The position numbers were made by a program, and so were the translations under genes. A stretch of 64,000 nucleotides of DNA from IMG/VR virus record IMGVR_UViG_3300023174_000036, positions 62,001 to 126,000 of that record. One strand, 5' to 3'. Numbering within the stretch: the first letter of the stretch is position 1; every line of letters starts with the position of its first letter. Shown here in pieces: positions 16,636 to 33,094 of this stretch. The notes under the pieces were generated by a model, which saw nothing but the letters and a program-made list of their open reading frames with translations, was not told the origin of the DNA and ran no database searches.

Positions 16636-17325
16636 TTAAGCGTTGGCTAATGTTACTGATACACCGTTCACAGCAGAACCCAATGTCCACTTGACTGGCA
16701 CGCCAGTAGCAAATTGTGTTCCTGAATTACGTACCAATACCACCGTACGGTTAGTAATTTTTCTAACCCAGTATGTTCCGCTTGCGCTGTCAGTTGCAAC
16801 AATGGCCATTTCTCCGGCGGCTGCTGGAGTAGCTTGAACTAATTTACAAATTGCTACGCCGTCTTGTGTACGAACTTGAAAACGTCTGCTACCAGTTTGA
16901 CGAACAATATCATTACCGCTTGTGCGATTAGTTGAACCAATTGTGATTGCTTGCACTGATAATGCATTTGGTACTGAAGAAGTTGTCAATGTTGCTACAG
17001 GAGTAGCTGAACCTGTACCACCAGCAACGCTGCCGTTGAATGTGATGGTTGGAGCCGCTGTATAGCCCGTGCCTGGAGATACCACTGTTACTGTATAAGT
17101 TGTTGCGGCAGTTACCACAACACTCAACACTGCTTTTCTACCACCGGCAATTTGTGGTGCAGTAATACTGGCCGCTGGGATGGTATATGTACCATTTACT
17201 AGTGTACCTAATGTACCAGCTGGTGCTGTTACACTTGCTACACCCTCACCGCCAGTTTCTTCTGCTCTGTTTGATGCGTTTGGATTTCTATCTCCAAAAA
17301 ATCTACCATTTAAAGGACGTCCCAT
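16636..17325 (-). CDS. Virion structural protein (229 aa), possibly head decoration or appendage
   Basis: Strong AAGGAG SD and its own late promoter; sits directly downstream of the major capsid gene; contains a PGTGYTAAPTITF motif. Confidence 0.75.
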   Translation of the reverse strand: MGRPLNGRFFGDRNPNASNRAEETGGEGVASVTAPAGTLGTLVNGTYTIPAASITAPQIAGGRKAVLSVVVTAATTYTVTVVSPGTGYTAAPTITFNGSVAGGTGSATPVATLTTSSVPNALSVQAITIGSTNRTSGNDIVRQTGSRRFQVRTQDGVAICKLVQATPAAAGEMAIVATDSASGTYWVRKITNRTVVLVRNSGTQFATGVPVKWTLGSAVNGVSVTLANA

Positions 17326-17346
17326 TTTAGTTTCTCCTTAAGAAAT

Positions 17347-17422
17347 AACAGCGTTCTAGGCTGTACGCGGTTGGATTTCCGCATAAAATTCACACCATGT
17401 GAATCATTACTATGTATTTAGC
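17347..17422 (-). promoter_or_regulatory. Late promoter (GCTAAATA, 17415-17422) and a three-hairpin 5' leader
   Basis: Minus-strand hairpins AUUCACA-UGG-UGUGAAU, AUGCGG-AAAUCCAA-CCGCGU and ACAGC-CUAGAAC-GCUGU lie in series before the SD. Confidence 0.55.
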
Positions 17423-27081: not shown

Positions 27082-28281
27082 TTAATATCGTTTGACACGC
27101 ACATGATTGTTCATGCGATTGACTTCAAACCCGTTACCCATGTCTTCCCAATCACCGTTGGGATTTTTATTTGGCAACATTTTTCCAGCAGTATTTGTAT
27201 TGGTGGGATTAGTATCAGTTTGGCTATCAGCATCAGCTGGCGTTACTTTTCCAGCTTGTTTTTTCTTTTCTGCTTCAGCGTCTGCTGGATTGTTTGGATT
27301 GGGATAATCAGTTGGCAATAACCCAGCAGGAATGTCAGAGTCTTTGTAAGCAGTTGCTTTTAAAAACTTGACCCATTCTTTTTTAATTAAATCTTCAGTC
27401 CACACCAGCGGTTGACCAATCACACTGGCAATTGTGACTTTGTCGCTGAACAACAACGGACCAATAATAGGAATGGCATTGAGTTGCCACAGCATAAAGT
27501 TGTCAATGAAGTTTCTTACACTGAGGTCGCCGCCAAACTTGTGTGCGTCCAAGAATGACAACCATAAAGTTTTACCAGCAAGTCCAGTAACTTTGTTGGA
27601 AACAATAGCACTAGCCCAACCCAACACTGGCACTTTGTTCCATGCACTTGGGAAAGTTGCAACTAATTGTGCAAACAGCACTGCTAAAACTTCTTTGTGA
27701 TAATCGTGAAATGCTTCAAGATCAAATCCAGGCTTGCCATCTTCCGCAATGCCGTCTGGGCCAACTGACAGTTTATCCAATGCCCAGTCCATCTGTTTCC
27801 AGTATAGGTTTACTGCTTCCCAGATGTCTGCGGCTTGCCAAGCATACAGAACTTTTGATAGACCGTTTGCAGTTAATGATTTCCAAGATGATCGTGCTTT
27901 ACGAGCTTGATTTCTTATGTGCGCTGGTAACACCGCAGGAGCATCAGGTTCTTCTCTAGGTTTGGGTTTTGGCTTATTGATGGCTTTCCAGTCGTTGTAC
28001 AATTTGTTGTGATAACCAACTGTGTCTTTTTCAACTTGTTCAATAAATTCTGGATCGTTCTTGTATTGACTCTTGCTGATGCGCTCGTCCAGCATTTTAT
28101 CCAGTTCAGCACGAGGCACTTTGATGCCTTTTTTGGTATAAGTGTTGAATACTTGAGAGCCTATGTCAGTGGCCACTTCACGACCAAATGCGGCTTTGGC
28201 AGTTTGTTTGCCAAGAAACTTCCACGCATATTCAGCAGTTTCACCTGCGGCACCTTCAAGAATAACATCCAACACTTTCAT
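27082..28281 (-). CDS. Hypothetical late protein (399 aa) with hydrophobic segments; candidate internal head protein
   Basis: Has its own perfect late promoter; N-terminus MKVLDVILE; hydrophobic stretches in the C-terminal half. Confidence 0.7.
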   Translation of the reverse strand: MKVLDVILEGAAGETAEYAWKFLGKQTAKAAFGREVATDIGSQVFNTYTKKGIKVPRAELDKMLDERISKSQYKNDPEFIEQVEKDTVGYHNKLYNDWKAINKPKPKPREEPDAPAVLPAHIRNQARKARSSWKSLTANGLSKVLYAWQAADIWEAVNLYWKQMDWALDKLSVGPDGIAEDGKPGFDLEAFHDYHKEVLAVLFAQLVATFPSAWNKVPVLGWASAIVSNKVTGLAGKTLWLSFLDAHKFGGDLSVRNFIDNFMLWQLNAIPIIGPLLFSDKVTIASVIGQPLVWTEDLIKKEWVKFLKATAYKDSDIPAGLLPTDYPNPNNPADAEAEKKKQAGKVTPADADSQTDTNPTNTNTAGKMLPNKNPNGDWEDMGNGFEVNRMNNHVRVKRY

Positions 28282-28302: not shown

Positions 28303-28310
28303 TATTTATA
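28303..28310 (-). promoter_or_regulatory. Late promoter TATAAATA
   Basis: Exact T4 late consensus, 22 nt upstream of the ATG at 28281. Confidence 0.75.
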
Positions 28311-28318
28311 CACTATCA

Positions 28319-28405
28319 AGATGAACTACGTTCATCTGTTCATCGCTTGCGCTCGAACTTTTCTTTCTTTTTCAACAGTAGCACATGATTAACTGCGAAG
28401 CAGTT
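28319..28405. other. Cluster of mini-hairpins (GNA triloops on opposite strands) flanking a pyrimidine/purine tract; candidate replication origin element
   Basis: AGATGAAC-GTA-GTTCATCT (- strand, 28319-37); GTTC.GA.GC-GCAA-GC.GA.T.GAAC (- strand); CTTTTCTTTCTTTTTC tract; AACTGC-GAA-GCAGTT (+ strand, 28391-405). Confidence 0.4.
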
Positions 28406-28785
28406 TAAATATTATCTAGATTGTTCAGTCACACTTTGCCCTGGCGGGCAAAAATGAAACATTATCTGAGTTGAACATGTCACACTAGCGTTACAGCAAT
28501 TACAGAGGCGGTTGTCCGGTACCTCGAGCTGAGTCTTTATACAACGGCGGGTCTTAATATATACGCTAACACACATCAAGCCGTGGGTATTTCTCCCTCT
28601 TTTAGCCTTTTTTACTGGGTTTCATAAACTAAACGGGTTATAGGCATATCCCATCAGCATCCTTGCGGGTAGTAGTTTACTGGTCTGTCGCCAAGCAGAT
28701 ACACCTTACCGTCACACATCAGAACGGATTCAGGGCACACTATCAACGCCTGTGCGGGCTTATTTGGCGATTAAACGGCCTGAAT
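28390..28785 (-). ncRNA. Candidate large structured non-coding RNA downstream of the GIY-YIG gene
   Basis: About 400 nt without a credible ORF in an otherwise gene-dense genome; many stems, some with G-U pairs that work only on the minus strand; a CC-GCAA-GG GNRA loop. Confidence 0.55.
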
Positions 28786-28787
28786 TA

Positions 28788-29213
28788 TTAGCCTTTGAGT
28801 ATATGCGAACCATGTACACGGACACTGATCTGGCCGTTATAATAGTCTTTTGATTCTAGAACTTTGTGGGTAAACTGTTCTCTGGCCTCGATGTAAGAGC
28901 ATTGCGCCTTGGATGTGCAATAATATAGGATTTCTCTTGTGAAGTTTTCTTTGCCTAATTTCAATACGTCCACGTTTAATTCCAGGTTTGACCCATAATA
29001 ATCACGCCAGTCGCTGTCGACTTTGCTACGTATTTTCTTTTTTTTCTTAGTGCCGTTCTTAAGTTTAACTACTTTGTAGCTGGTCTTAGCGAACTTGGCT
29101 AGTTTTTTGCCTATATATTTGCGTCCAGAGATGACATTTGTTATCAAGTACACGAAACCAACACAATCTTCGGGCAGTGTTTCAACAATTTCGTTTTGAT
29201 AAGTCCATGACAT
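28788..29213 (-). CDS. Stand-alone GIY-YIG family nuclease (T4 endonuclease II-like size) with a Lys-rich insertion
   Basis: GFVYLIT...RKYIGKK motif, a conserved E (YIEAREQ) and N (YYNG); 141 aa with no appended DNA-binding domain. Confidence 0.8.
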   Translation of the reverse strand: MSWTYQNEIVETLPEDCVGFVYLITNVISGRKYIGKKLAKFAKTSYKVVKLKNGTKKKKKIRSKVDSDWRDYYGSNLELNVDVLKLGKENFTREILYYCTSKAQCSYIEAREQFTHKVLESKDYYNGQISVRVHGSHILKG

Positions 29214-29228
29214 GCAGTAGTTAGCATA

Positions 29229-29480
29229 TCATTCCGCCGTGTCACCTTTCTTTTGAGCCTTGGTTTCGTCCAAATGTACTCTGTACTGTTGAACTTTTTC
29301 CCTGCGTTCACGTGCAATGATACGAATCTGCGCTAGCCAGTAGCGCATATTTTCTCCTGCCCGTCTTGTGCCTTTGTTGATCCAGTTTTGATTTGCTTTG
29401 AAATATTGCCTAAAGGCTTCCATTAAACGCTCATGCGTTTCTTCGTCCTGATAATCTAATGGAGGTACCCGTTTGCTCAT
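29229..29480 (-). CDS. Small basic helical protein (83 aa), possibly related to histone-H1-like Hc1 proteins
   Basis: HE.L..AF..Y...N..W..KG.R.AG...R..L..I...ARERR..VQ pattern; TAATG-coupled to gp46. Confidence 0.55.
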   Translation of the reverse strand: MSKRVPPLDYQDEETHERLMEAFRQYFKANQNWINKGTRRAGENMRYWLAQIRIIARERREKVQQYRVHLDETKAQKKGDTAE

Positions 29481-31258
29481 TATTCTGTTACTTCTAAGTC
29501 GTTGGCATAGTTTGTAAAGCCATTTTCCTTAATAACTTTAAGAACATTGTTCACACGACCAATTAATTCGTCCTTGTGACTGATCAAGAAAATATTCTTC
29601 TTGCGTTCACGTGCCATTTTCTTAAGTACAGCCAATGCGCCTTCAACTCCTGATGCGTCTAAGCCGTTATCCACTAACTCGTCAACAAACAACAAGTTAA
29701 TTGATTGATATAAACTTTCCCAAACATCACGGAAACTCCAACTCAAACCTAGTATCAAACGATTGCGTTCACCACGGCTCAAGTTATCAAAGTCAAGATC
29801 TTGCCCCAGCTGTGTGATAATAACAGTTAAATCGTTTTGGAACACCACAGTATGCGGTAATCCCATCTTGTCAAGATAATATGTAAGTCTATTGTTGAGA
29901 TATGCCAAGTTCTGATCAATAATCTTCTTACGGATAAAACTATCCTTGCTGGTCAACAGCTTTAGCAAGAACTCTTGATGATCTTTAAGCGTGTTCAGTT
30001 GATTAACATTGTCCCATGAGATAGTCTGCATGGCAGTGTGCTGTAGTTCGTCAATTTGCTCTTGATAAGGATCCGTTTCGCCTGCTTTGATTGTTAATTG
30101 CGTTTCCAGTGTCTTGAGATTGTTTTGATGTTTGAGTGCTTGCTCAACAGAGTCGTAATAAGTGTTGGGACGTCCAGACACTTCACCAATGCCTTTGATC
30201 TCTTTCATGATCTTGGTCAAGTCGCTGTTAACTTTGTCCAAATACTTTTGTGCTTCTGCCAAATGTTGTTGAGCAGTGGTACTCATTTCTTCATGTTTGT
30301 GATCATGTAGTTCTTGCTCACAAGCGTGACACTTTTTGTCTTTCAACTTAGCAAGCTCGTCAGCGTACTTTTTTACGCTTCGCTCCGCTTGCGCTGTCGC
30401 GCTGTCTAACGTAGCCCGTTCCTTATTTAGGCTTTTCAGCTTCGCTGTCTGTTCTTCGAACAGTTTCAAGTCATTATGCTTGGTCAGCTCAGAATCAATG
30501 TCTACATTTTCTAATTCCACAATAGCTCTTGCTATTTTTTCTATTTCTTCAGTGTGCTGATTGTTCCATGCATTTTGTCTAGATGTTAATGAGTCAATAC
30601 TTTGTTGTATTTTTTCGTTAGACTTTTTTGCGGCTTCAATATCTGCATTTTCTTGATAGATATTGTCCTTGGTAGTCTTAATCATCTCTTTAAGACCTTC
30701 AGCTTTTTCACTGAGTAAGGTAATACCAAGCAACTGCTCAATAATTACACGCTGATCATTTGCCTTCATAGATAAGAAAGGCTCTGTATAAGTGTTAAGC
30801 GCAACAATGTGCCTAAACATATCATGACTCATGCCCAACAAGTCGTCAAGATCTCGTTGCGTTTCACGCATATCGCCTTGAGCATCGTCAGTTTCTTCTG
30901 TATCCTGTGCTTGGTTATTAACAAAGAATTGCAACACGTTGGGTTTACGCCCACGTTCAATGCGATATTCAGTGCCGTCTTTATCAAATGTAAGTGTAAC
31001 CAACATATTTTTATTGTTGATTTTATTGATCAAGTTGTCTTTTTTGATGTTAGTGAGCGCATTACCGTATAACGCATAGCTTAATGCATTTACAATAGTG
31101 GTTTTACCAGTACCGTTACGTGATCCGCTGTCATCACCGCCTTGATCCAAGTTCTCTCCAAGGACAAGTGTTAGATTTTCTTTATCAAAGTTTACAGCCT
31201 GGGTTTGATTACCCACACTCATGAAATTCTTAACTGTTAAATCTTTAATCTTTATCAT
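29480..31258 (-). CDS. gp46: Recombination ATPase subunit (T4 gp46 / Rad50 / SbcC family)
   Basis: Walker A RNGTGKT, coiled coils with a CHAC zinc hook, LSRGE signature, Walker B LLFVDE, and ISH H-loop. Confidence 0.95.
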   Translation of the reverse strand: MIKIKDLTVKNFMSVGNQTQAVNFDKENLTLVLGENLDQGGDDSGSRNGTGKTTIVNALSYALYGNALTNIKKDNLINKINNKNMLVTLTFDKDGTEYRIERGRKPNVLQFFVNNQAQDTEETDDAQGDMRETQRDLDDLLGMSHDMFRHIVALNTYTEPFLSMKANDQRVIIEQLLGITLLSEKAEGLKEMIKTTKDNIYQENADIEAAKKSNEKIQQSIDSLTSRQNAWNNQHTEEIEKIARAIVELENVDIDSELTKHNDLKLFEEQTAKLKSLNKERATLDSATAQAERSVKKYADELAKLKDKKCHACEQELHDHKHEEMSTTAQQHLAEAQKYLDKVNSDLTKIMKEIKGIGEVSGRPNTYYDSVEQALKHQNNLKTLETQLTIKAGETDPYQEQIDELQHTAMQTISWDNVNQLNTLKDHQEFLLKLLTSKDSFIRKKIIDQNLAYLNNRLTYYLDKMGLPHTVVFQNDLTVIITQLGQDLDFDNLSRGERNRLILGLSWSFRDVWESLYQSINLLFVDELVDNGLDASGVEGALAVLKKMARERKKNIFLISHKDELIGRVNNVLKVIKENGFTNYANDLEVTE

Positions 31259-32268
31259 AGGCTATTATAAATGTTCAGTAATAGATTCTTATCGAACTGA
31301 TCAGAATCAATGTTTACGATTTGACTGCTAACAATTTGATCAACACTTTCAAAAGATTGCACATCAATATTGGTATTAATTTCAATCTCTTTCTTTTCCG
31401 CAATCAAGGTAAGTTCGCGAATATTATAATCAGCAATAAACTTTTCTTTAATGAAACTTGCTTCTTCATAACTGATATCAATATCCAGTGCAACCCGCAA
31501 ATGTTGTTTGGGTTTGATAATTTTATCAGCATCGTCGATCAATTGGCTTAGTTTAACAGTACGGAACGTAGGTTGAGCAGGCCAACTGTGATATTCAGGT
31601 TGCCCATCCCACTCTAATATCATCATACCGCGGTCGTCATCCCATGTATCTGCATAATTGTGGGGAAACGCATTGCCAATATAGATCATATTACGCTGTT
31701 GCTGACGTTTGTGGAAGTGTCCACTAAATCCTAGTTCGTAATTTTGAAAACTATCTAGTTGAATCTCGCCATGATCTGGCATCTGTACCATAGCGTTCAT
31801 AAAGAAGCTGGGCAATTCAAAGTGTCCAAAGATGTACTTGCCGCCTTTCTTACCAATGCTTCGCCACTCATCTCCTACAAGCCACGGGCAGAGTGTAACA
31901 TCCCCAATGGTAGTCGGTTCGTGTACCACAGTGATTCCGGGAATATACTTGCCAAACTCAACGGAATGGATATCACGTTTGTCTTTATAATATAAATCAT
32001 GATTACCAGGAAAAAAGTAAAACTGATCAAATGCTTTACCCAGTTTTTCCAGTGCTCGAAGCGAGTAGTCCATAGTAGTGATATTAAGACTATTGCGATT
32101 GTGATGCCAATCGCCCATAAAAATTCCTGTGTCACACCCTTCCTCCTTTGCTTTAGCAATGTACCAATCCACAAAGTCTTCGCAATCTTGATTGTGTACA
32201 CTACTATTGCTTTTTAATCCAAAGTGTATGTCTGTGAAACACGCTACTTTTTTAAACAAATTACTCAC
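31255..32268 (-). CDS. gp47: Recombination nuclease subunit (T4 gp47 / Mre11 / SbcD family)
   Basis: Metallophosphoesterase motifs DIHFG, GDWHH, GNHD, GHFE and SGHFH. Start reassigned to GTG 32268, which overlaps the gp55 stop. Confidence 0.95.
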   Translation of the reverse strand: MSNLFKKVACFTDIHFGLKSNSSVHNQDCEDFVDWYIAKAKEEGCDTGIFMGDWHHNRNSLNITTMDYSLRALEKLGKAFDQFYFFPGNHDLYYKDKRDIHSVEFGKYIPGITVVHEPTTIGDVTLCPWLVGDEWRSIGKKGGKYIFGHFELPSFFMNAMVQMPDHGEIQLDSFQNYELGFSGHFHKRQQQRNMIYIGNAFPHNYADTWDDDRGMMILEWDGQPEYHSWPAQPTFRTVKLSQLIDDADKIIKPKQHLRVALDIDISYEEASFIKEKFIADYNIRELTLIAEKKEIEINTNIDVQSFESVDQIVSSQIVNIDSDQFDKNLLLNIYNSL

Positions 32269-33094
32269 TAGACGTGTCCTCGTTGTGTCGTTTAAGTGCG
32301 GCCGCATGTTCGCCAGCACCAGTTCTGCTGTAACTAGGGTTCATGCCATTTATTTCCAAAATGTCATCACGAATATTTTGGTTACGCTTCTCGATATTAA
32401 TAACACGTACAAAACTATTTGTAACAGCCGCCGTGAAATACGCAAACGGGTTATCCGATTTACTTTCATCAAACTGTAATCCTATTTGTGTTAATTGCAA
32501 GATTGCCTGACCCTTCATTTCGTCGTTGTAAGTGTAACCACGAACATTGCCTCGTGTGGCATATCGCTCACACAATTTTAACATCATCCGAGCTAAAGTT
32601 GGAGTAATTTGGCCCGCATCTTTATCAAACTTGCCTTTGATTAGATCACCCTTCCAATGACTCTTGCCCACACATACTAGTTCGTCTTTGTCATCAAACT
32701 TCCAGTGTTGGAATGGAGGAAAGTTTACTTTGTCTCTATGATCAGCAAGTGTTTTTGGATTTTTCTTTCTGATACCGTTAAGTGGAATATGATCAAATGT
32801 CATGATCCTGAATACTAAATCGGTTTTTAACATTTTTTTGTAGTCTACTTCGCAGTCTGCTTGTTTGACTTTTTCACCAGCGGCTTTGCGCCTTTGGTAT
32901 TCCGCATCGCCAATGCGTTTGGCCCTTGCACGTTTGGCTTCTGCTATGGTTCTGATGTTAATTTTAGATATATCGGATAAAATCAAATCATATTGGTGAT
33001 AAATTGGGTCTGTAAAACTGCAATATGAGCTTTTACTTCTATGTATTTCCAACAACATATCCTTGTTGTTTAGGTAATTAACTTTCACTGTCAT
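32261..33094 (-). CDS. gp55: Late-transcription sigma factor (T4 gp55 family)
   Basis: YLNNKD N-terminus, N.RGYTY.DEM, and FD..KS.NPFAYFT....NSF.R.I..EK motifs; adjacent to gp47/gp46 as in T4-like phages. Confidence 0.9.
   Translation of the reverse strand: MTVKVNYLNNKDMLLEIHRSKSSYCSFTDPIYHQYDLILSDISKINIRTIAEAKRARAKRIGDAEYQRRKAAGEKVKQADCEVDYKKMLKTDLVFRIMTFDHIPLNGIRKKNPKTLADHRDKVNFPPFQHWKFDDKDELVCVGKSHWKGDLIKGKFDKDAGQITPTLARMMLKLCERYATRGNVRGYTYNDEMKGQAILQLTQIGLQFDESKSDNPFAYFTAAVTNSFVRVINIEKRNQNIRDDILEINGMNPSYSRTGAGEHAAALKRHNEDTSSE

What the first reader, a model, noticed from the sequence alone, without database searches (positions are those of the whole stretch)
28390..29213. Minimal GIY-YIG nuclease followed immediately by a ~400-nt highly structured non-coding element: candidate protein-RNA system
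Seen: the largest non-coding gap in the window starts right at the nuclease's tandem stop codons. On the same strand it folds by eye into a series of stems: GCACA/UGUGC, CCGU/ACGG, UCUG/CAGA, CC-GCAA-GG, GGG/CCC twice, ACGGC/GCCGU enclosing a long UUGAUGUGU/AUAUAUUAA helix with several G-U pairs, GAGG/CCUC enclosing CGG/CCG, and UUUGCCC/GGGCAAA. The G-U pairs would be A-C mismatches on the plus strand, which points to a minus-strand RNA. I see no tRNA, tmRNA, RNase P or intron consensus. Established: some compact nucleases (IscB, TnpB, HEARO-associated HNH) work with an adjacent structured RNA. Inference: an undescribed large phage ncRNA that either partners the nuclease as a ribonucleoprotein or serves as an origin primer. 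I see no clear variable guide segment in this single copy.
Basis: partly seen in the sequence, partly recalled or inferred. Interest (0 to 1): 0.8.

Follow-up and report, generated by a model that had tools for sequence, protein, structure and literature searches.

The report
Large mobile-element RNA beside small nuclease
The gap after the small nuclease gene holds a real, roughly 460-base folded RNA whose first third has been a function-less catalogue entry since 2010, and which carries two unpaired stretches that always share the same variable six letters, a feature that gives a concrete way to test what it does.

Summary
Window 28319-28780 (minus strand) is one conserved, structured RNA that starts at the tandem TAA stops of a 141-aa SegE-type GIY-YIG gene.

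It is not wholly undescribed. Bases 28622-28760 match Rfam RF01718 (Polynucleobacter-1 RNA, 69.8 bits against a cut-off of 37). The 2010 paper already placed that RNA downstream of PSSM2_218-like genes, which I show are this GIY-YIG family.

New here:
- The RNA is about 460 nt. It has a middle domain with two covarying pseudoknots and a 3' domain of two tandem modules. Neither part is in the Rfam model.
- The two modules carry the same variable 6-mer (over 20 versions; concordance perfect at positions 1 and 2 across 148 RNAs). No complementary partner was found nearby.
- The nuclease link is lineage synteny. About 97% of phage-type RNAs have the GIY-YIG upstream, sometimes inverted, separated by another gene, or replaced by a PD-(D/E)xK nuclease.
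- At least 120 Polynucleobacter-type copies have no adjacent GIY-YIG and instead precede a catalytic-domain-only tyrosine recombinase.
- Close GIY-YIG relatives exist without the RNA.

Best reading: an autonomous, trans-acting RNA of mobile elements. A dedicated guide-RNA partnership is unproven but not excluded.

The parts
28788..29213 (-). 141-aa stand-alone SegE-type GIY-YIG nuclease domain, with no DNA-binding domain; tandem TAA TAA stop
   Evidence: Pfam PF19835 at 5e-32 covering residues 3-129. PHROG 447, whose name 'NAD synthetase' is a misnomer. 39% identical to P-SSM2 PSSM2_218. dN about 0.15 with saturated dS against distant phages.
28319..28780 (-). Whole conserved structured RNA, about 460 nt
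   Evidence: BLAST and nhmmer conservation across L005-L251. Covariation. Element map.
28622..28760 (-). 5' domain, which is Rfam RF01718 Polynucleobacter-1 RNA (helices P1-P6)
   Evidence: cmscan 69.8 bits against gathering score 37, model positions 1-141. The same hit lies 15-30 nt after the GIY-YIG stop in 16 of 20 related loci.
28485..28612 (-). Middle domain: conserved AAGGCUAAAAG joiner, hairpin P7 (28585-28597), long hairpin P8 (28544-28584), and P9 (28494-28531) holding the motif GGUACCGGACAACCGCC (28507-28523; most of its positions are invariant)
   Evidence: The 2010 supplementary alignment marks part of this as a 'tail' with a pseudoknot.
28563..28569 (-). Pseudoknot 1, 5' strand (the P8 loop, UUAGCGU), pairing with 28485-28491 (ACGCUAG)
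   Evidence: 7 pairs, 88-100% canonical, with 10-39 double changes per pair in 148 sequences. Also found by RNAalifold.
28541..28545 (-). Pseudoknot 2, 5' strand (GUUGU), pairing with the P9 loop at 28511-28515 (ACAAC)
   Evidence: 5 pairs, 99-100% canonical, with 59 and 43 double changes in two of them.
28460..28485 (-). Module 1 of the 3' domain (GUGUGAC ... AACUC + variable core). Core A, AGAUAAU, lies at 28461-28467
28435..28452 (-). Hairpin H1 (UUUGCCC-GCCA-GGGCAAA) between the two modules
   Evidence: Folds better than shuffles in 127/127 distinct homologues.
28410..28434 (-). Module 2 (GUGUGAC ... AAUCU + variable core). Core B, AGAUAAU, lies at 28411-28417 and is identical to core A
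   Evidence: Perfect A/B concordance at the variable positions. The same rule holds in the Polynucleobacter-type RNA.
28319..28403 (-). 3' end: UUCG hairpin H2 (28393-28403), an A-rich linker, GNRA-capped stem H3 (28338-28358) and terminal hairpin H4 (28319-28337)
   Evidence: H4 has 8 pairs at 98-100% canonical with up to 56 double changes. H3 beats shuffles in 125/125 sequences and H2 in 58/87.
28303..28310 (-). T4-type late promoter TATAAATA for the downstream 399-aa gene. It is not part of the RNA and marks its outer limit
   Evidence: Read from the sequence. An ATAAAT box is conserved wherever a same-strand gene follows.

Best explanation
The gap encodes one autonomous, trans-acting structured RNA of about 460 nt. 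It is a full-length form of the Polynucleobacter-1 family.

Where it lives. Mobile elements carry it: a clade of uncultured freshwater and marine T4-like phages, and a genomic or defence island in Polynucleobacter.

How it is made. In this phage it is probably the 3' tail of the early gp47-gp46-orf83-GIY-YIG transcript. In marine relatives it probably has its own promoter, because the nuclease gene there is inverted behind a terminator.

How it is built. A variable 5' domain (the Rfam part) and a double-pseudoknotted middle domain form a scaffold. The 3' domain presents two unpaired stretches with the same 6-nt sequence.

How it probably works (inferred). These twin stretches are specificity determinants that base-pair with a fast-changing nucleic-acid partner in trans. 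That partner could be two copies of one site, or both strands of one site.

The nuclease. The neighbouring GIY-YIG is a strongly conserved, stand-alone catalytic domain. It is most simply a phage DNA endonuclease working with gp46/47, as T4 DenA does. It sits next to the RNA through clade synteny, not as a dedicated RNA-bound partner.

Shown: the RNA's extent, its structure, its family, the twin-core rule, and the neighbour statistics. Inferred: trans pairing, the transcription pattern, and the nuclease's role.
For: Family, extent and structure:
- Rfam match.
- Conservation over q1-q470, where q counts bases on the minus strand from 28787.
- Eight helices, two of them pseudoknots, covary in a structure-blind alignment of 148 sequences. 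Other hairpins beat shuffles.

Twin cores:
- Position 1 is A/A in 71 and G/G in 75 sequences, with none discordant (mutual information 1.0 bit). The next best column anywhere in the RNA scores 0.19.
- There are at least 10 phage-type versions and at least 12 Polynucleobacter-type versions, with the 6-mers identical in 98 of 113.
- The spacing of 47-62 nt shows no bias toward multiples of three, so the region is not coding.

Independence from the nuclease:
- 120 Polynucleobacter-type contigs have no adjacent GIY-YIG.
- L225 has RF01718 at 96.8 bits with no nuclease nearby.
- L067 has a GIY-YIG 80% identical, placed after nrdB, with no RNA within 3 kb.
- No GIY-YIG homologue at or below 56% identity has a large gap explained by this RNA downstream; two (L114, L118) have unexplained 308- and 597-nt gaps that nhmmer does not match.
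- L098 has the GIY-YIG inverted behind a terminator, while gp46 and the RNA keep their strand.

Selection: for the GIY-YIG, dN is about 0.15 while dS is saturated, as it is for gp46.

Not a 5' leader: many loci have a convergent baseplate gene right after the RNA.

Transcription: RNA-library contigs cover the RNA and span the GIY-YIG stop.
Against: - No partner for the twin cores was found. I checked flanks of 3-14 kb on each side and the 64-kb window.
- Within T4-like phages the RNA and GIY-YIG are adjacent in about 97% of loci and stay adjacent even after inversion. That could reflect selection for linkage.
- In three contexts the nearest gene is a small DNA-cutting or DNA-joining enzyme, two of which clearly lack the usual DNA-recognition domain: the GIY-YIG, the PDDEXK_15 nuclease (domain content not assessed), and the Xer-like catalytic domain alone. 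Pure chance does not predict this.
- The transcript evidence comes only from assembled contigs, which may include carried-over DNA.
- The DenA-like role for the nuclease is inference. Neither sequence nor fold search tied it to T4 EndoII or any other solved GIY-YIG structure.
Confidence: 0.5

Rival explanations
1. Guide or specificity RNA for domain-minimal DNA enzymes. The RNA binds the neighbouring enzyme: the GIY-YIG in phages, a PD-(D/E)xK nuclease in one locus, or a catalytic-domain-only tyrosine recombinase in Polynucleobacter islands. Its two identical cores direct the enzyme to DNA, for example to the two strands or two half-sites of a target. For a tyrosine recombinase they could instead direct it to two partner sites, which must share an identical crossover core.
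For: - The GIY-YIG is only the catalytic domain: 141 aa, with Pfam covering residues 3-129.
- The recombinase aligns only to residues about 100-290 of XerD/XerA.
- Linkage is about 97% in phage-type loci and 69 of 80, plus 4 further away, in Polynucleobacter-type loci.
- Adjacency survives inversion.
- One locus has a nuclease of a different fold in the same slot.
- Both lineages keep the twin fast-changing 6-mers in unpaired stretches.
Against: - Each linkage sits inside one syntenic lineage, so each counts as roughly one evolutionary event.
- The RNA occurs without any nuclease (L225), and the GIY-YIG occurs without the RNA (L067, cyanophages, Melnitz).
- Extra genes sit between the GIY-YIG and the RNA in about 5% of loci.
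- The cores do not covary with the GIY-YIG protein or gene.
- No matching or complementary DNA was found at the element's borders or flanks.
- Six nucleotides is very short for a guide.
- No published RNA-guided GIY-YIG or tyrosine recombinase turned up.
Confidence: 0.2
2. Free-standing homing endonuclease parked beside a conserved RNA gene. The GIY-YIG (and in L194 the PD-(D/E)xK gene) is a selfish endonuclease gene whose cleavage site lies in or near the highly conserved RNA gene. The RNA itself has an unrelated function.
For: - The best protein matches are SegE and group I intron endonucleases and PADLOC 'homing endonuclease' models.
- The gene occurs in either orientation.
- A different nuclease family occupies the same slot in L194.
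- An 80%-identical copy lies at another classic homing-endonuclease hot spot, next to nrdB.
- Some closer phage pairs show lower dS for the GIY-YIG than for gp46, which suggests exchange between phages.
Against: - It is near-fixed rather than sporadic.
- It is under strong purifying selection over saturated dS and is more conserved than gp46.
- It has no DNA-binding domain.
- The wider family is present in several hundred cyanophage genome records.
Confidence: 0.15
3. Cis-acting mRNA element. It would be a 3' UTR that stabilises or regulates the GIY-YIG/gp46 message, or a leader for the downstream gene.
For: It starts at the stop codon, and no sigma-70-like promoter was found between the ORF and the RNA. 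RNA-library contigs span the junction. The 2010 main-text table listed a possible cis-regulatory role.
Against: - A late promoter lies between the RNA and the next gene.
- In many loci a convergent gene follows.
- The RNA is kept when the GIY-YIG is inverted, separated or absent.
- About 460 nt with two pseudoknots is far more than a stabiliser needs.
Confidence: 0.07
4. DNA-level element. It would be a replication origin or primer region, or a recombination or integration site whose two direct repeats must share a core.
For: Two direct repeats must stay identical, as iterons or crossover cores do. A tyrosine recombinase lies next to the Polynucleobacter-type copy, inside an island with a tRNA-Phe gene some kb away. 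One contig repeats the last 61 nt of the RNA 6.3 kb away.
Against: - Compensatory base-pair changes, including G-U pairs on one strand only, show selection at the RNA level.
- The repeats are only about 50 bp apart and direct.
- No att-like duplicates were found in 29 of 30 long contigs.
- The T4-like phages have no recombinase.
Confidence: 0.05

Closest known systems
Rfam RF01718, Polynucleobacter-1 RNA (Weinberg et al. 2010, Genome Biol 11:R31, PMC2864571)
   Same: Window 28622-28760 matches the full 141-nt model well above threshold. The habitat is the same (fresh water). The position is the same: downstream of PSSM2_218-like genes, which are the GIY-YIG family here. The function is still unknown.
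   Different: - The Rfam model covers only the first third.
- The most widely kept part is the 3' half, which also occurs with other, non-RF01718 5' domains (L052, L058, L083, L089, L096, L098, L099).
- The 2010 alignment marked part of the middle domain as an optional 'tail' with a pseudoknot. It left the two-module 3' domain as unannotated flank.
- The authors found it in no purified phage. Here it sits in T4-like phage contigs.
Guide RNAs of mobile-element enzymes: TnpB/IscB omega RNAs (including HEARO) and IS110 bridge RNA
   Same: A large structured RNA is encoded next to a compact DNA enzyme on a mobile element. Short variable segments sit inside a conserved scaffold. Like a bridge RNA, it has two separate variable stretches.
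   Different: - The enzyme families differ: GIY-YIG, PD-(D/E)xK and tyrosine recombinase rather than RuvC/HNH or DEDD.
- There is no Rfam match to these RNAs.
- The two variable stretches are identical to each other. They are not complementary to different donor and target DNAs.
- No matching DNA was found.
- Co-occurrence is not obligatory.
T4 Seg-type free-standing GIY-YIG homing endonucleases and T4 endonuclease II (DenA)
   Same: The protein is a SegE-like GIY-YIG domain by profile. It is about the size of DenA (136 aa, from my own knowledge). It sits beside gp46/47, or in a relative beside nrdB, where T4 keeps denA.
   Different: - It has no C-terminal DNA-binding domain, unlike Seg proteins.
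- It has no detectable sequence or fold match to any solved GIY-YIG structure.
- It carries a long beta-hairpin insertion at about residues 40-66.
- It is near-fixed and strongly conserved, unlike typical homing genes.
Large orphan bacterial and phage RNAs (GOLLD, ROOL, OLE, raiA)
   Same: Several hundred nucleotides, many covarying helices and pseudoknots, frequent residence on phages or other mobile elements, and no known function.
   Different: No Rfam match to any of them. The twin identical variable stretches are not a known feature of those RNAs (from my own knowledge).

Membership tests
Rfam RF01718 Polynucleobacter-1 RNA | Covariance-model score at or above the curated gathering score, over the full model | tested here: met
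   69.8 bits against 37, model positions 1-141, E 1e-14.
Rfam RF01718 Polynucleobacter-1 RNA | Model helices kept by compensatory changes in relatives | tested here: met
   P1, the outer helix and the inner hairpin are 97-100% canonical, with up to 72 double changes per pair. Sixteen of 20 related loci score 71-120 bits.
Rfam RF01718 Polynucleobacter-1 RNA | Lies downstream of GOS11034 / PSSM2_218-like genes, as described in 2010 | tested here: met
   PSSM2_218 is 39% identical to the window's GIY-YIG, E 2e-19.
GIY-YIG nuclease superfamily, SegE-type domain (PF19835) | Profile match above the curated cut-off, with the GIY and YIG tyrosines and the downstream Arg/Glu/Asn conserved | tested here: met
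   111 bits against 25. Y22, Y33, G35 and N126 are invariant in 21 diverse homologues; R93 is in at least 90% of them. R93, E94 and N126 are invariant in the 9-sequence set. Mapping these onto I-TevI catalytic residues is inferred.
GIY-YIG nuclease superfamily, SegE-type domain (PF19835) | Fold resembles solved GIY-YIG domains | tested here: inconclusive
   The AlphaFold2 model is confident (pLDDT 90.9) with a beta-beta-[insertion]-alpha-beta-alpha order. Foldseek against the PDB gave nothing below E 0.15.
Free-standing homing endonuclease (Seg/Mob type) | Nuclease domain joined to a DNA-binding domain | tested here: not met
   141 aa, with the catalytic-domain profile covering residues 3-129.
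Free-standing homing endonuclease (Seg/Mob type) | Sporadic presence among close relatives and relaxed selection | tested here: not met
   Present in 99 of about 102 informative RNA loci. dN 0.15 with saturated dS, and more conserved than gp46.
Free-standing homing endonuclease (Seg/Mob type) | Site-specific cleavage of nuclease-less alleles, and homing | not testable with these tools
   Needs enzyme assays and mixed infections.
RNA-guided nuclease or recombinase systems (TnpB/IscB omega RNA, IS110 bridge RNA) | Characteristic effector (RuvC/HNH or DEDD recombinase) and a matching RNA family | tested here: not met
   The effector is a GIY-YIG. There are no Rfam hits other than RF01718 at E up to 1.
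RNA-guided nuclease or recombinase systems (TnpB/IscB omega RNA, IS110 bridge RNA) | Variable RNA segment complementary to DNA at the element's border or target | tested here: not met
   No sense or antisense copy of the cores lies at any consistent place in the flanks or is enriched in the window.
RNA-guided nuclease or recombinase systems (TnpB/IscB omega RNA, IS110 bridge RNA) | Obligatory co-occurrence of RNA and effector | tested here: not met
   The RNA occurs without the GIY-YIG. The GIY-YIG occurs without the RNA.
RNA-guided nuclease or recombinase systems (TnpB/IscB omega RNA, IS110 bridge RNA) | Physical RNA-protein complex and RNA-programmed activity | not testable with these tools
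   Needs pull-down and cleavage or recombination assays.
Group I intron carrying a GIY-YIG gene | Intron RNA on both sides of the ORF, and a match to intron models | tested here: not met
   Only 15 nt separate the ORF start from the upstream orf83. There is no intron hit at E up to 1.
tRNA / tmRNA | Detected by ARAGORN or the Rfam tmRNA models | tested here: not met
   No genes in the window and no Rfam hit.

The most novel reading that the evidence does not exclude
The RNA is a portable targeting subunit for DNA enzymes that have lost their own DNA-recognition domains. These are a GIY-YIG nuclease in T4-like phages, a PD-(D/E)xK nuclease in one phage, and a catalytic-domain-only Xer-like tyrosine recombinase in Polynucleobacter islands. 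Its two identical, rapidly changing 6-nt stretches would read two matching DNA sites. That would be a new class of RNA-guided DNA cutting or recombination, unrelated to the CRISPR, OMEGA or bridge-RNA systems.
Probability: 0.15. Interest if true: 0.95.

Novelty: new variant of a known kind. Interest (0 to 1): 0.6.

Why it matters
Polynucleobacter-1 has been an orphan Rfam entry since 2010. This work shows four things:
- The catalogued 141 nt are the more changeable front of a much larger, double-pseudoknotted RNA.
- The RNA travels on T4-like phages and on a bacterial island.
- Its usual protein neighbour is a nuclease. That neighbour gene is still widely mis-named 'NAD synthetase' in phage annotations.
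- It carries two copies of a fast-evolving 6-mer that are forced to stay identical.

The last point turns "function unknown" into an experiment. Change one or both cores, then look for the partner they bind.

If the recurring neighbours (small nucleases and a small recombinase) prove to be clients of the RNA, this would be a new kind of RNA-directed DNA enzyme. If not, it is still one of the few large, complex phage RNAs with a clear handle on specificity.

Tried and rejected
- Coding or ribosome-hopping reading of the twin cores. Many versions look like a codon plus UAA/UGA. Rejected: the A-B spacing varies from 47 to 62 nt with no bias toward multiples of three, and mini-ORFs are not conserved.
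- A and B pairing with each other, or palindromic dimerisation. This fits the AG and GG versions but fails for the GC version (by hand). Minimum-free-energy folds disagree between homologues.
- A complementary partner in cis. None appeared in the RNA alignment (mutual-information scan), in the GIY-YIG gene or protein, or in the flanks. Hairpins in the window that display the complement are not conserved.
- Promoter (-10 box) reading of the cores. It does not fit the GAUGAA, CUGAG or CCACAG versions.
- Codon or T-box-like reading. Position 1 is a purine in every version, which argues for a structural constraint instead. There is no T-box hit in Rfam. The GGUACCG shared with the T-box sequence is from memory and was not tested.
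- Recent horizontal spread as the reason the GIY-YIG is more conserved than gp46. Rejected for distant pairs, because synonymous sites are saturated.
- freshwater-2 RNA as the partner. It is a separate 5' leader.
- Isolated phages carrying the RNA. blastn of the region against 50,697 phage records found only gp46 matches. Melnitz, ACP17, phiN3 and V45v66 have no RF01718.
- Att-like duplication of the RNA's end near the recombinase. Seen in 1 of 30 long contigs only.
- Technical failures. A profile search of the PDB found nothing.
- Steps skipped. I did not run the count of structure pairs or build covariance models. The long dot-bracket strings would have had to be typed in, and the structure-blind nhmmer alignment already gave unbiased pair counts.
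Full report
**1. What is at the coordinates**

The window comes from an uncultured T4-like phage. On the minus strand the gene order is:
- a Mre11-like gp47 (31255-32319),
- a Rad50-like gp46 (29480-31258),
- an 83-aa ORF,
- a 141-aa ORF (28788-29213),
- a 506-nt gap,
- a 399-aa ORF.

A T4 baseplate gene lies on the other strand.

The 141-aa protein matches Pfam SegE_GIY-YIG at 5e-32 over the whole profile. It also matches PHROG 447. The ORF ends in TAA TAA.

A scan of the window with Rfam's gathering thresholds gives two hits. One is freshwater-2 at 17323-17404. The other is RF01718, Polynucleobacter-1 RNA, at 28622-28760 on the minus strand (69.8 bits against a cut-off of 37, full model). 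It remains the only hit in the gap at E up to 1. ARAGORN finds no tRNA or tmRNA.

**2. What was already known**

The only paper in the library that names the family is Weinberg et al. 2010. Its supplement makes three points:
- The 3' half is not always detected.
- Most examples lie downstream of genes of family GOS11034, possibly related to PSSM2_218 of cyanophage P-SSM2.
- None was found in a purified phage.

PSSM2_218 is annotated 'NAD synthetase'. It is 39% identical to the window's GIY-YIG, E 2e-19. The nuclease-RNA neighbourhood was therefore seen in 2010 without the protein being recognised as a nuclease.

The original Stockholm file marks an optional 'tail' with a pseudoknot. It carries the more distal sequence only as flank.

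**3. Extent and structure of the RNA**

IMG/VR holds more than 573 relatives of the protein. In nearly all of the 80 fetched loci whose downstream sequence is long enough, the non-coding stretch after the gene is conserved at 70-99% identity. It runs from the stop codon to about q470, where q counts bases on the minus strand from 28787.

RF01718 is found 15-30 nt after the stop, on the same strand, in 16 of 20 diverse loci.

I aligned 148 non-redundant RNAs with nhmmer, which ignores structure. Eight helices are 88-100% canonical with many double compensatory changes. They are three helices of the Rfam part, the tip of the long hairpin P8, the inner stem of P9, the terminal hairpin H4, and two pseudoknots:
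- The P8 loop (28563-28569) pairs with 28485-28491.
- GUUGU (28541-28545) pairs with the P9 loop (28511-28515).

RNAalifold on 39 sequences recovers the first pseudoknot and most of the hairpins.

Hairpins whose length varies are mis-registered in the alignment. I tested them by folding each homologue separately. P7, P8, P9, H1 and H3 beat shuffled sequence in 100/101, 136/137, 107/114, 127/127 and 125/125 distinct sequences. H2 does so in 58/87.

The RNA spans 28319-28780. A late promoter TATAAATA follows at 28303-28310.

The single-sequence fold energy is not significant by itself (z = -1.45).

**4. Which part is the core**

In more distant loci only the 3' half is recognisable (profile positions about 244-464). 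This holds for L052, L083, L089, L090, L096, L099 and L100, and on the opposite strand for L097 and L098. L058 keeps only the last 110 nt or so.

The seven of these that I re-scanned (L052, L058, L083, L089, L096, L098, L099) have no RF01718 hit even at E 0.01. The Rfam model therefore describes an exchangeable 5' domain. The conserved core is not in Rfam.

**5. The twin cores**

The 3' domain is a tandem pair of modules. Each module has GUGUGAC, about 7 nt, AACUC or AAUCU, a variable core, and then a hairpin.

The cores are AGAUAAU at 28461-28467 and again at 28411-28417. They are the same in each RNA but differ between RNAs.

- Among 180 aligned instances, nearly all pairs are identical, and mismatches fall almost only at the seventh base.
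- Among 148 non-redundant RNAs, position 1 is A/A in 71 and G/G in 75, with no discordant case. That is a mutual information of 1.0 bit, and no other column exceeds 0.19.
- Position 2 is equally concordant.
- Phage-type versions include AGAUAA, GGAUAA, GCAUAA, GGAUGA, AGAUGA, GAAUGA and AGCUGA. The marine L098 has GCCACA.

The spacing is 47-62 nt with no bias toward multiples of three, so this is not a reading-frame effect.

I found no complementary or third copy in any of these places:
- the RNA itself,
- the GIY-YIG gene or protein,
- the flanks of 3-14 kb,
- the 64-kb window.

Parallel change with no partner in cis is most simply explained if both stretches recognise the same partner in trans. 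That step is inference.

**6. Is the nuclease a partner?**

I scanned IMG/VR for the RNA motif alone (GGTACCGNAYRACCGCC). Of 118 loci:
- 94 have the GIY-YIG directly upstream on the same strand.
- 5 have it upstream with an extra 257-335-aa ORF in between. A sixth locus, L164, has the same kind of extra ORF directly upstream of the RNA, but the stored piece is too short to show whether a GIY-YIG lies beyond it.
- 11 are too short to tell.
- 5 are chance matches in coding sequence.
- L194 has a 188-aa PDDEXK_15 endonuclease in the same slot (Pfam 5.6e-30).
- L225 carries a good RF01718 (96.8 bits) in a different context. A DNA ligase, a WYL gene and a winged-helix gene lie upstream, a D-Ala-D-Ala carboxypeptidase and an IscA-like gene lie downstream, and no nuclease is present.

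gp46 and gp47 are present in nearly all loci that have the GIY-YIG and enough upstream sequence to tell. The association is therefore no tighter than the clade's synteny.

In the marine L097 and L098 the GIY-YIG gene is inverted. It lies between a terminator that ends the gp46 unit and the RNA, and both gp46 and the RNA keep their strand. The RNA there must have its own promoter.

From the protein's side:
- Homologues at or above about 57% identity usually have a 380-510-nt gap downstream.
- Most homologues at or below 56% have none.
- The two exceptions, L114 and L118, have 308- and 597-nt gaps in which nhmmer finds no trace of this RNA.
- P-SSM2, Melnitz, ACP17, phiN3 and V45v66 lack the RNA.
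- L067 has a copy 80% identical placed after nrdB, with no RNA within 3 kb.

**7. Selection on the nuclease**

Between phages whose gp46 proteins are only 50-60% identical, the GIY-YIG stays 75-83% identical. For these pairs synonymous sites are saturated in both genes. Codon identity at conserved residues is 0.41-0.53 in each. dN is about 0.15 for the GIY-YIG against 0.3-0.5 for gp46.

This is strong purifying selection, not recent transfer. It is unlike a decaying homing gene. Some closer pairs do show lower dS for the GIY-YIG than for gp46, which suggests occasional exchange.

The protein is a bare catalytic domain. An AlphaFold2 model is confident (pLDDT 90.9) and has a long beta-hairpin insertion. 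Neither sequence search, profile search nor Foldseek against the PDB finds a relative.

It sits beside gp46/47, or beside nrdB in L067 and Melnitz. That recalls T4 endonuclease II (denA), but this comparison rests on my own knowledge and is not shown here.

**8. A second lineage with a different neighbour**

The Polynucleobacter-type variant has the motif GGAGAYAGCGAAACCGCCCTT. It is absent from IMG/VR but present in at least 120 freshwater metagenome contigs. None has an adjacent GIY-YIG.

The neighbourhood is conserved:
- 69 of 80 contigs with enough sequence have a 188-230-aa tyrosine recombinase downstream on the same strand, and 4 more have it further off.
- 69 of 71 have a DUF6641 gene upstream on the opposite strand.

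The recombinase aligns only with the catalytic domain of XerD/XerA.

The wider neighbourhood looks like a genomic or defence island. It holds a restriction-modification pair, a second integrase, AAA and STAND ATPases, a 385-aa GIY-YIG protein, and in two contigs a tRNA-Phe gene.

The twin-core rule holds here too. The 6-mers are identical in 98 of 113 contigs, with at least 12 versions such as AGCGAA, AUCAAA, ACCAAA and GACAAA. Again there is no partner in the flanks.

Only 1 of 30 long contigs repeats the end of the RNA elsewhere.

**9. Transcription**

Four freshwater metatranscriptome assemblies contain the region. Some contigs span the GIY-YIG stop into the RNA (28479-28868 and 28580-28800). 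In two libraries the 3' domain bin has the highest summed depth.

These are assembled contigs from relatives, and DNA carry-over cannot be excluded. This shows presence in RNA libraries and nothing more.

No sigma-70-like promoter or intrinsic terminator was found around the RNA in the window.

**10. Weighing the readings**

The RNA is clearly a gene in its own right, and its fold is under selection.

In each case where the RNA or the protein turns up in a new context (L225, the whole Polynucleobacter lineage, L067, cyanophages), the pair is not kept together. I therefore rank an autonomous trans-acting RNA first (0.5).

I do not dismiss the guide-RNA idea (0.2; 0.15 for its boldest form), for three reasons:
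- Three different small DNA enzymes sit next to it in different contexts, and two of them clearly lack the usual DNA-recognition domain.
- The GIY-YIG stays adjacent even after inversion.

Literature searches found no RNA-guided GIY-YIG or tyrosine recombinase.

The other readings rank lower. A homing endonuclease parked beside a conserved RNA gene gets 0.15. A cis-acting UTR gets 0.07, and a DNA-level origin or recombination site gets 0.05.

**11. Verdict**

The feature is real. It is a new, much larger variant of a known orphan RNA family. The proposed nuclease-RNA partnership is unproven and is not required by the data. The twin-core rule is the most useful new fact, and it remains unexplained.

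Noticed in passing
window 17323-17404 (-): Rfam RF02980 freshwater-2 RNA (73.1 bits against a cut-off of 49.9). It lies just upstream of an ORF whose ATG is near 17325, and a terminator-like hairpin lies upstream of it. It is a second catalogued orphan RNA motif in the same phage.
   Followed up: partly
window 27082-28281 (-) and related loci: The 399-aa late gene after the RNA is hypervariable (30-97% identity) or absent. Its first residues (MK-I/V-Y-E-I) and its late promoter are conserved. In many relatives a convergent baseplate gene follows the RNA directly. It has no Pfam, PHROG or NCBIfam match.
   Followed up: partly
L194:8819-9385: A 188-aa PDDEXK_15 phage endonuclease occupies the slot between the orf83 homologue and the RNA, where the GIY-YIG normally sits.
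   Followed up: partly
L035:3372-4274; L145, L148, L155, L202, L206; probably L164, L087, L095: An extra 257-362-aa ORF is inserted between the GIY-YIG and the RNA. It mostly has no family match. One copy (L148) has a weak methyltransferase-like hit.
   Followed up: partly
L058:3427-3800; also L052, L083, L089, L090: Alternative 5' and middle domains replace the RF01718 part while the 3' core is kept. L058 contains a T-arm-like GGGTTCGAACC, but ARAGORN calls no tRNA there.
   Followed up: partly
Phage records in GenBank: Hundreds of cyanophage and other phage homologues of this GIY-YIG domain are annotated 'NAD synthetase' (PHROG 447). This looks like a propagated misannotation.
   Followed up: no
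L290, 6.3 kb upstream of the RNA: A 61-nt direct copy (93% identical) of the RNA's 3' terminal part. It may be an att-like repeat bounding an element that carries the RNA. Seen in only 1 of 30 long contigs.
   Followed up: no
L093, L116 (genome contigs): Two contigs binned into an uncultured Polynucleobacter genome carry phage-type GIY-YIG genes, one with the RNA. This hints that Polynucleobacter hosts some of these phages. Many other hits are phage contigs mis-binned into assembled genomes of unrelated phyla.
   Followed up: no
window 28788-29213 protein model: The confident AlphaFold2 model has a long, lysine-rich beta-hairpin insertion (about residues 40-66) between the YIG strand and the first helix. 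No solved structure resembles the model in Foldseek.
   Followed up: partly
All core versions: The first base of the twin core is a purine in every version. The third base is mostly A in the AT-rich phages and mostly C in the Polynucleobacter type. In phages the next three bases read UAA or UGA. I have no explanation.
   Followed up: partly
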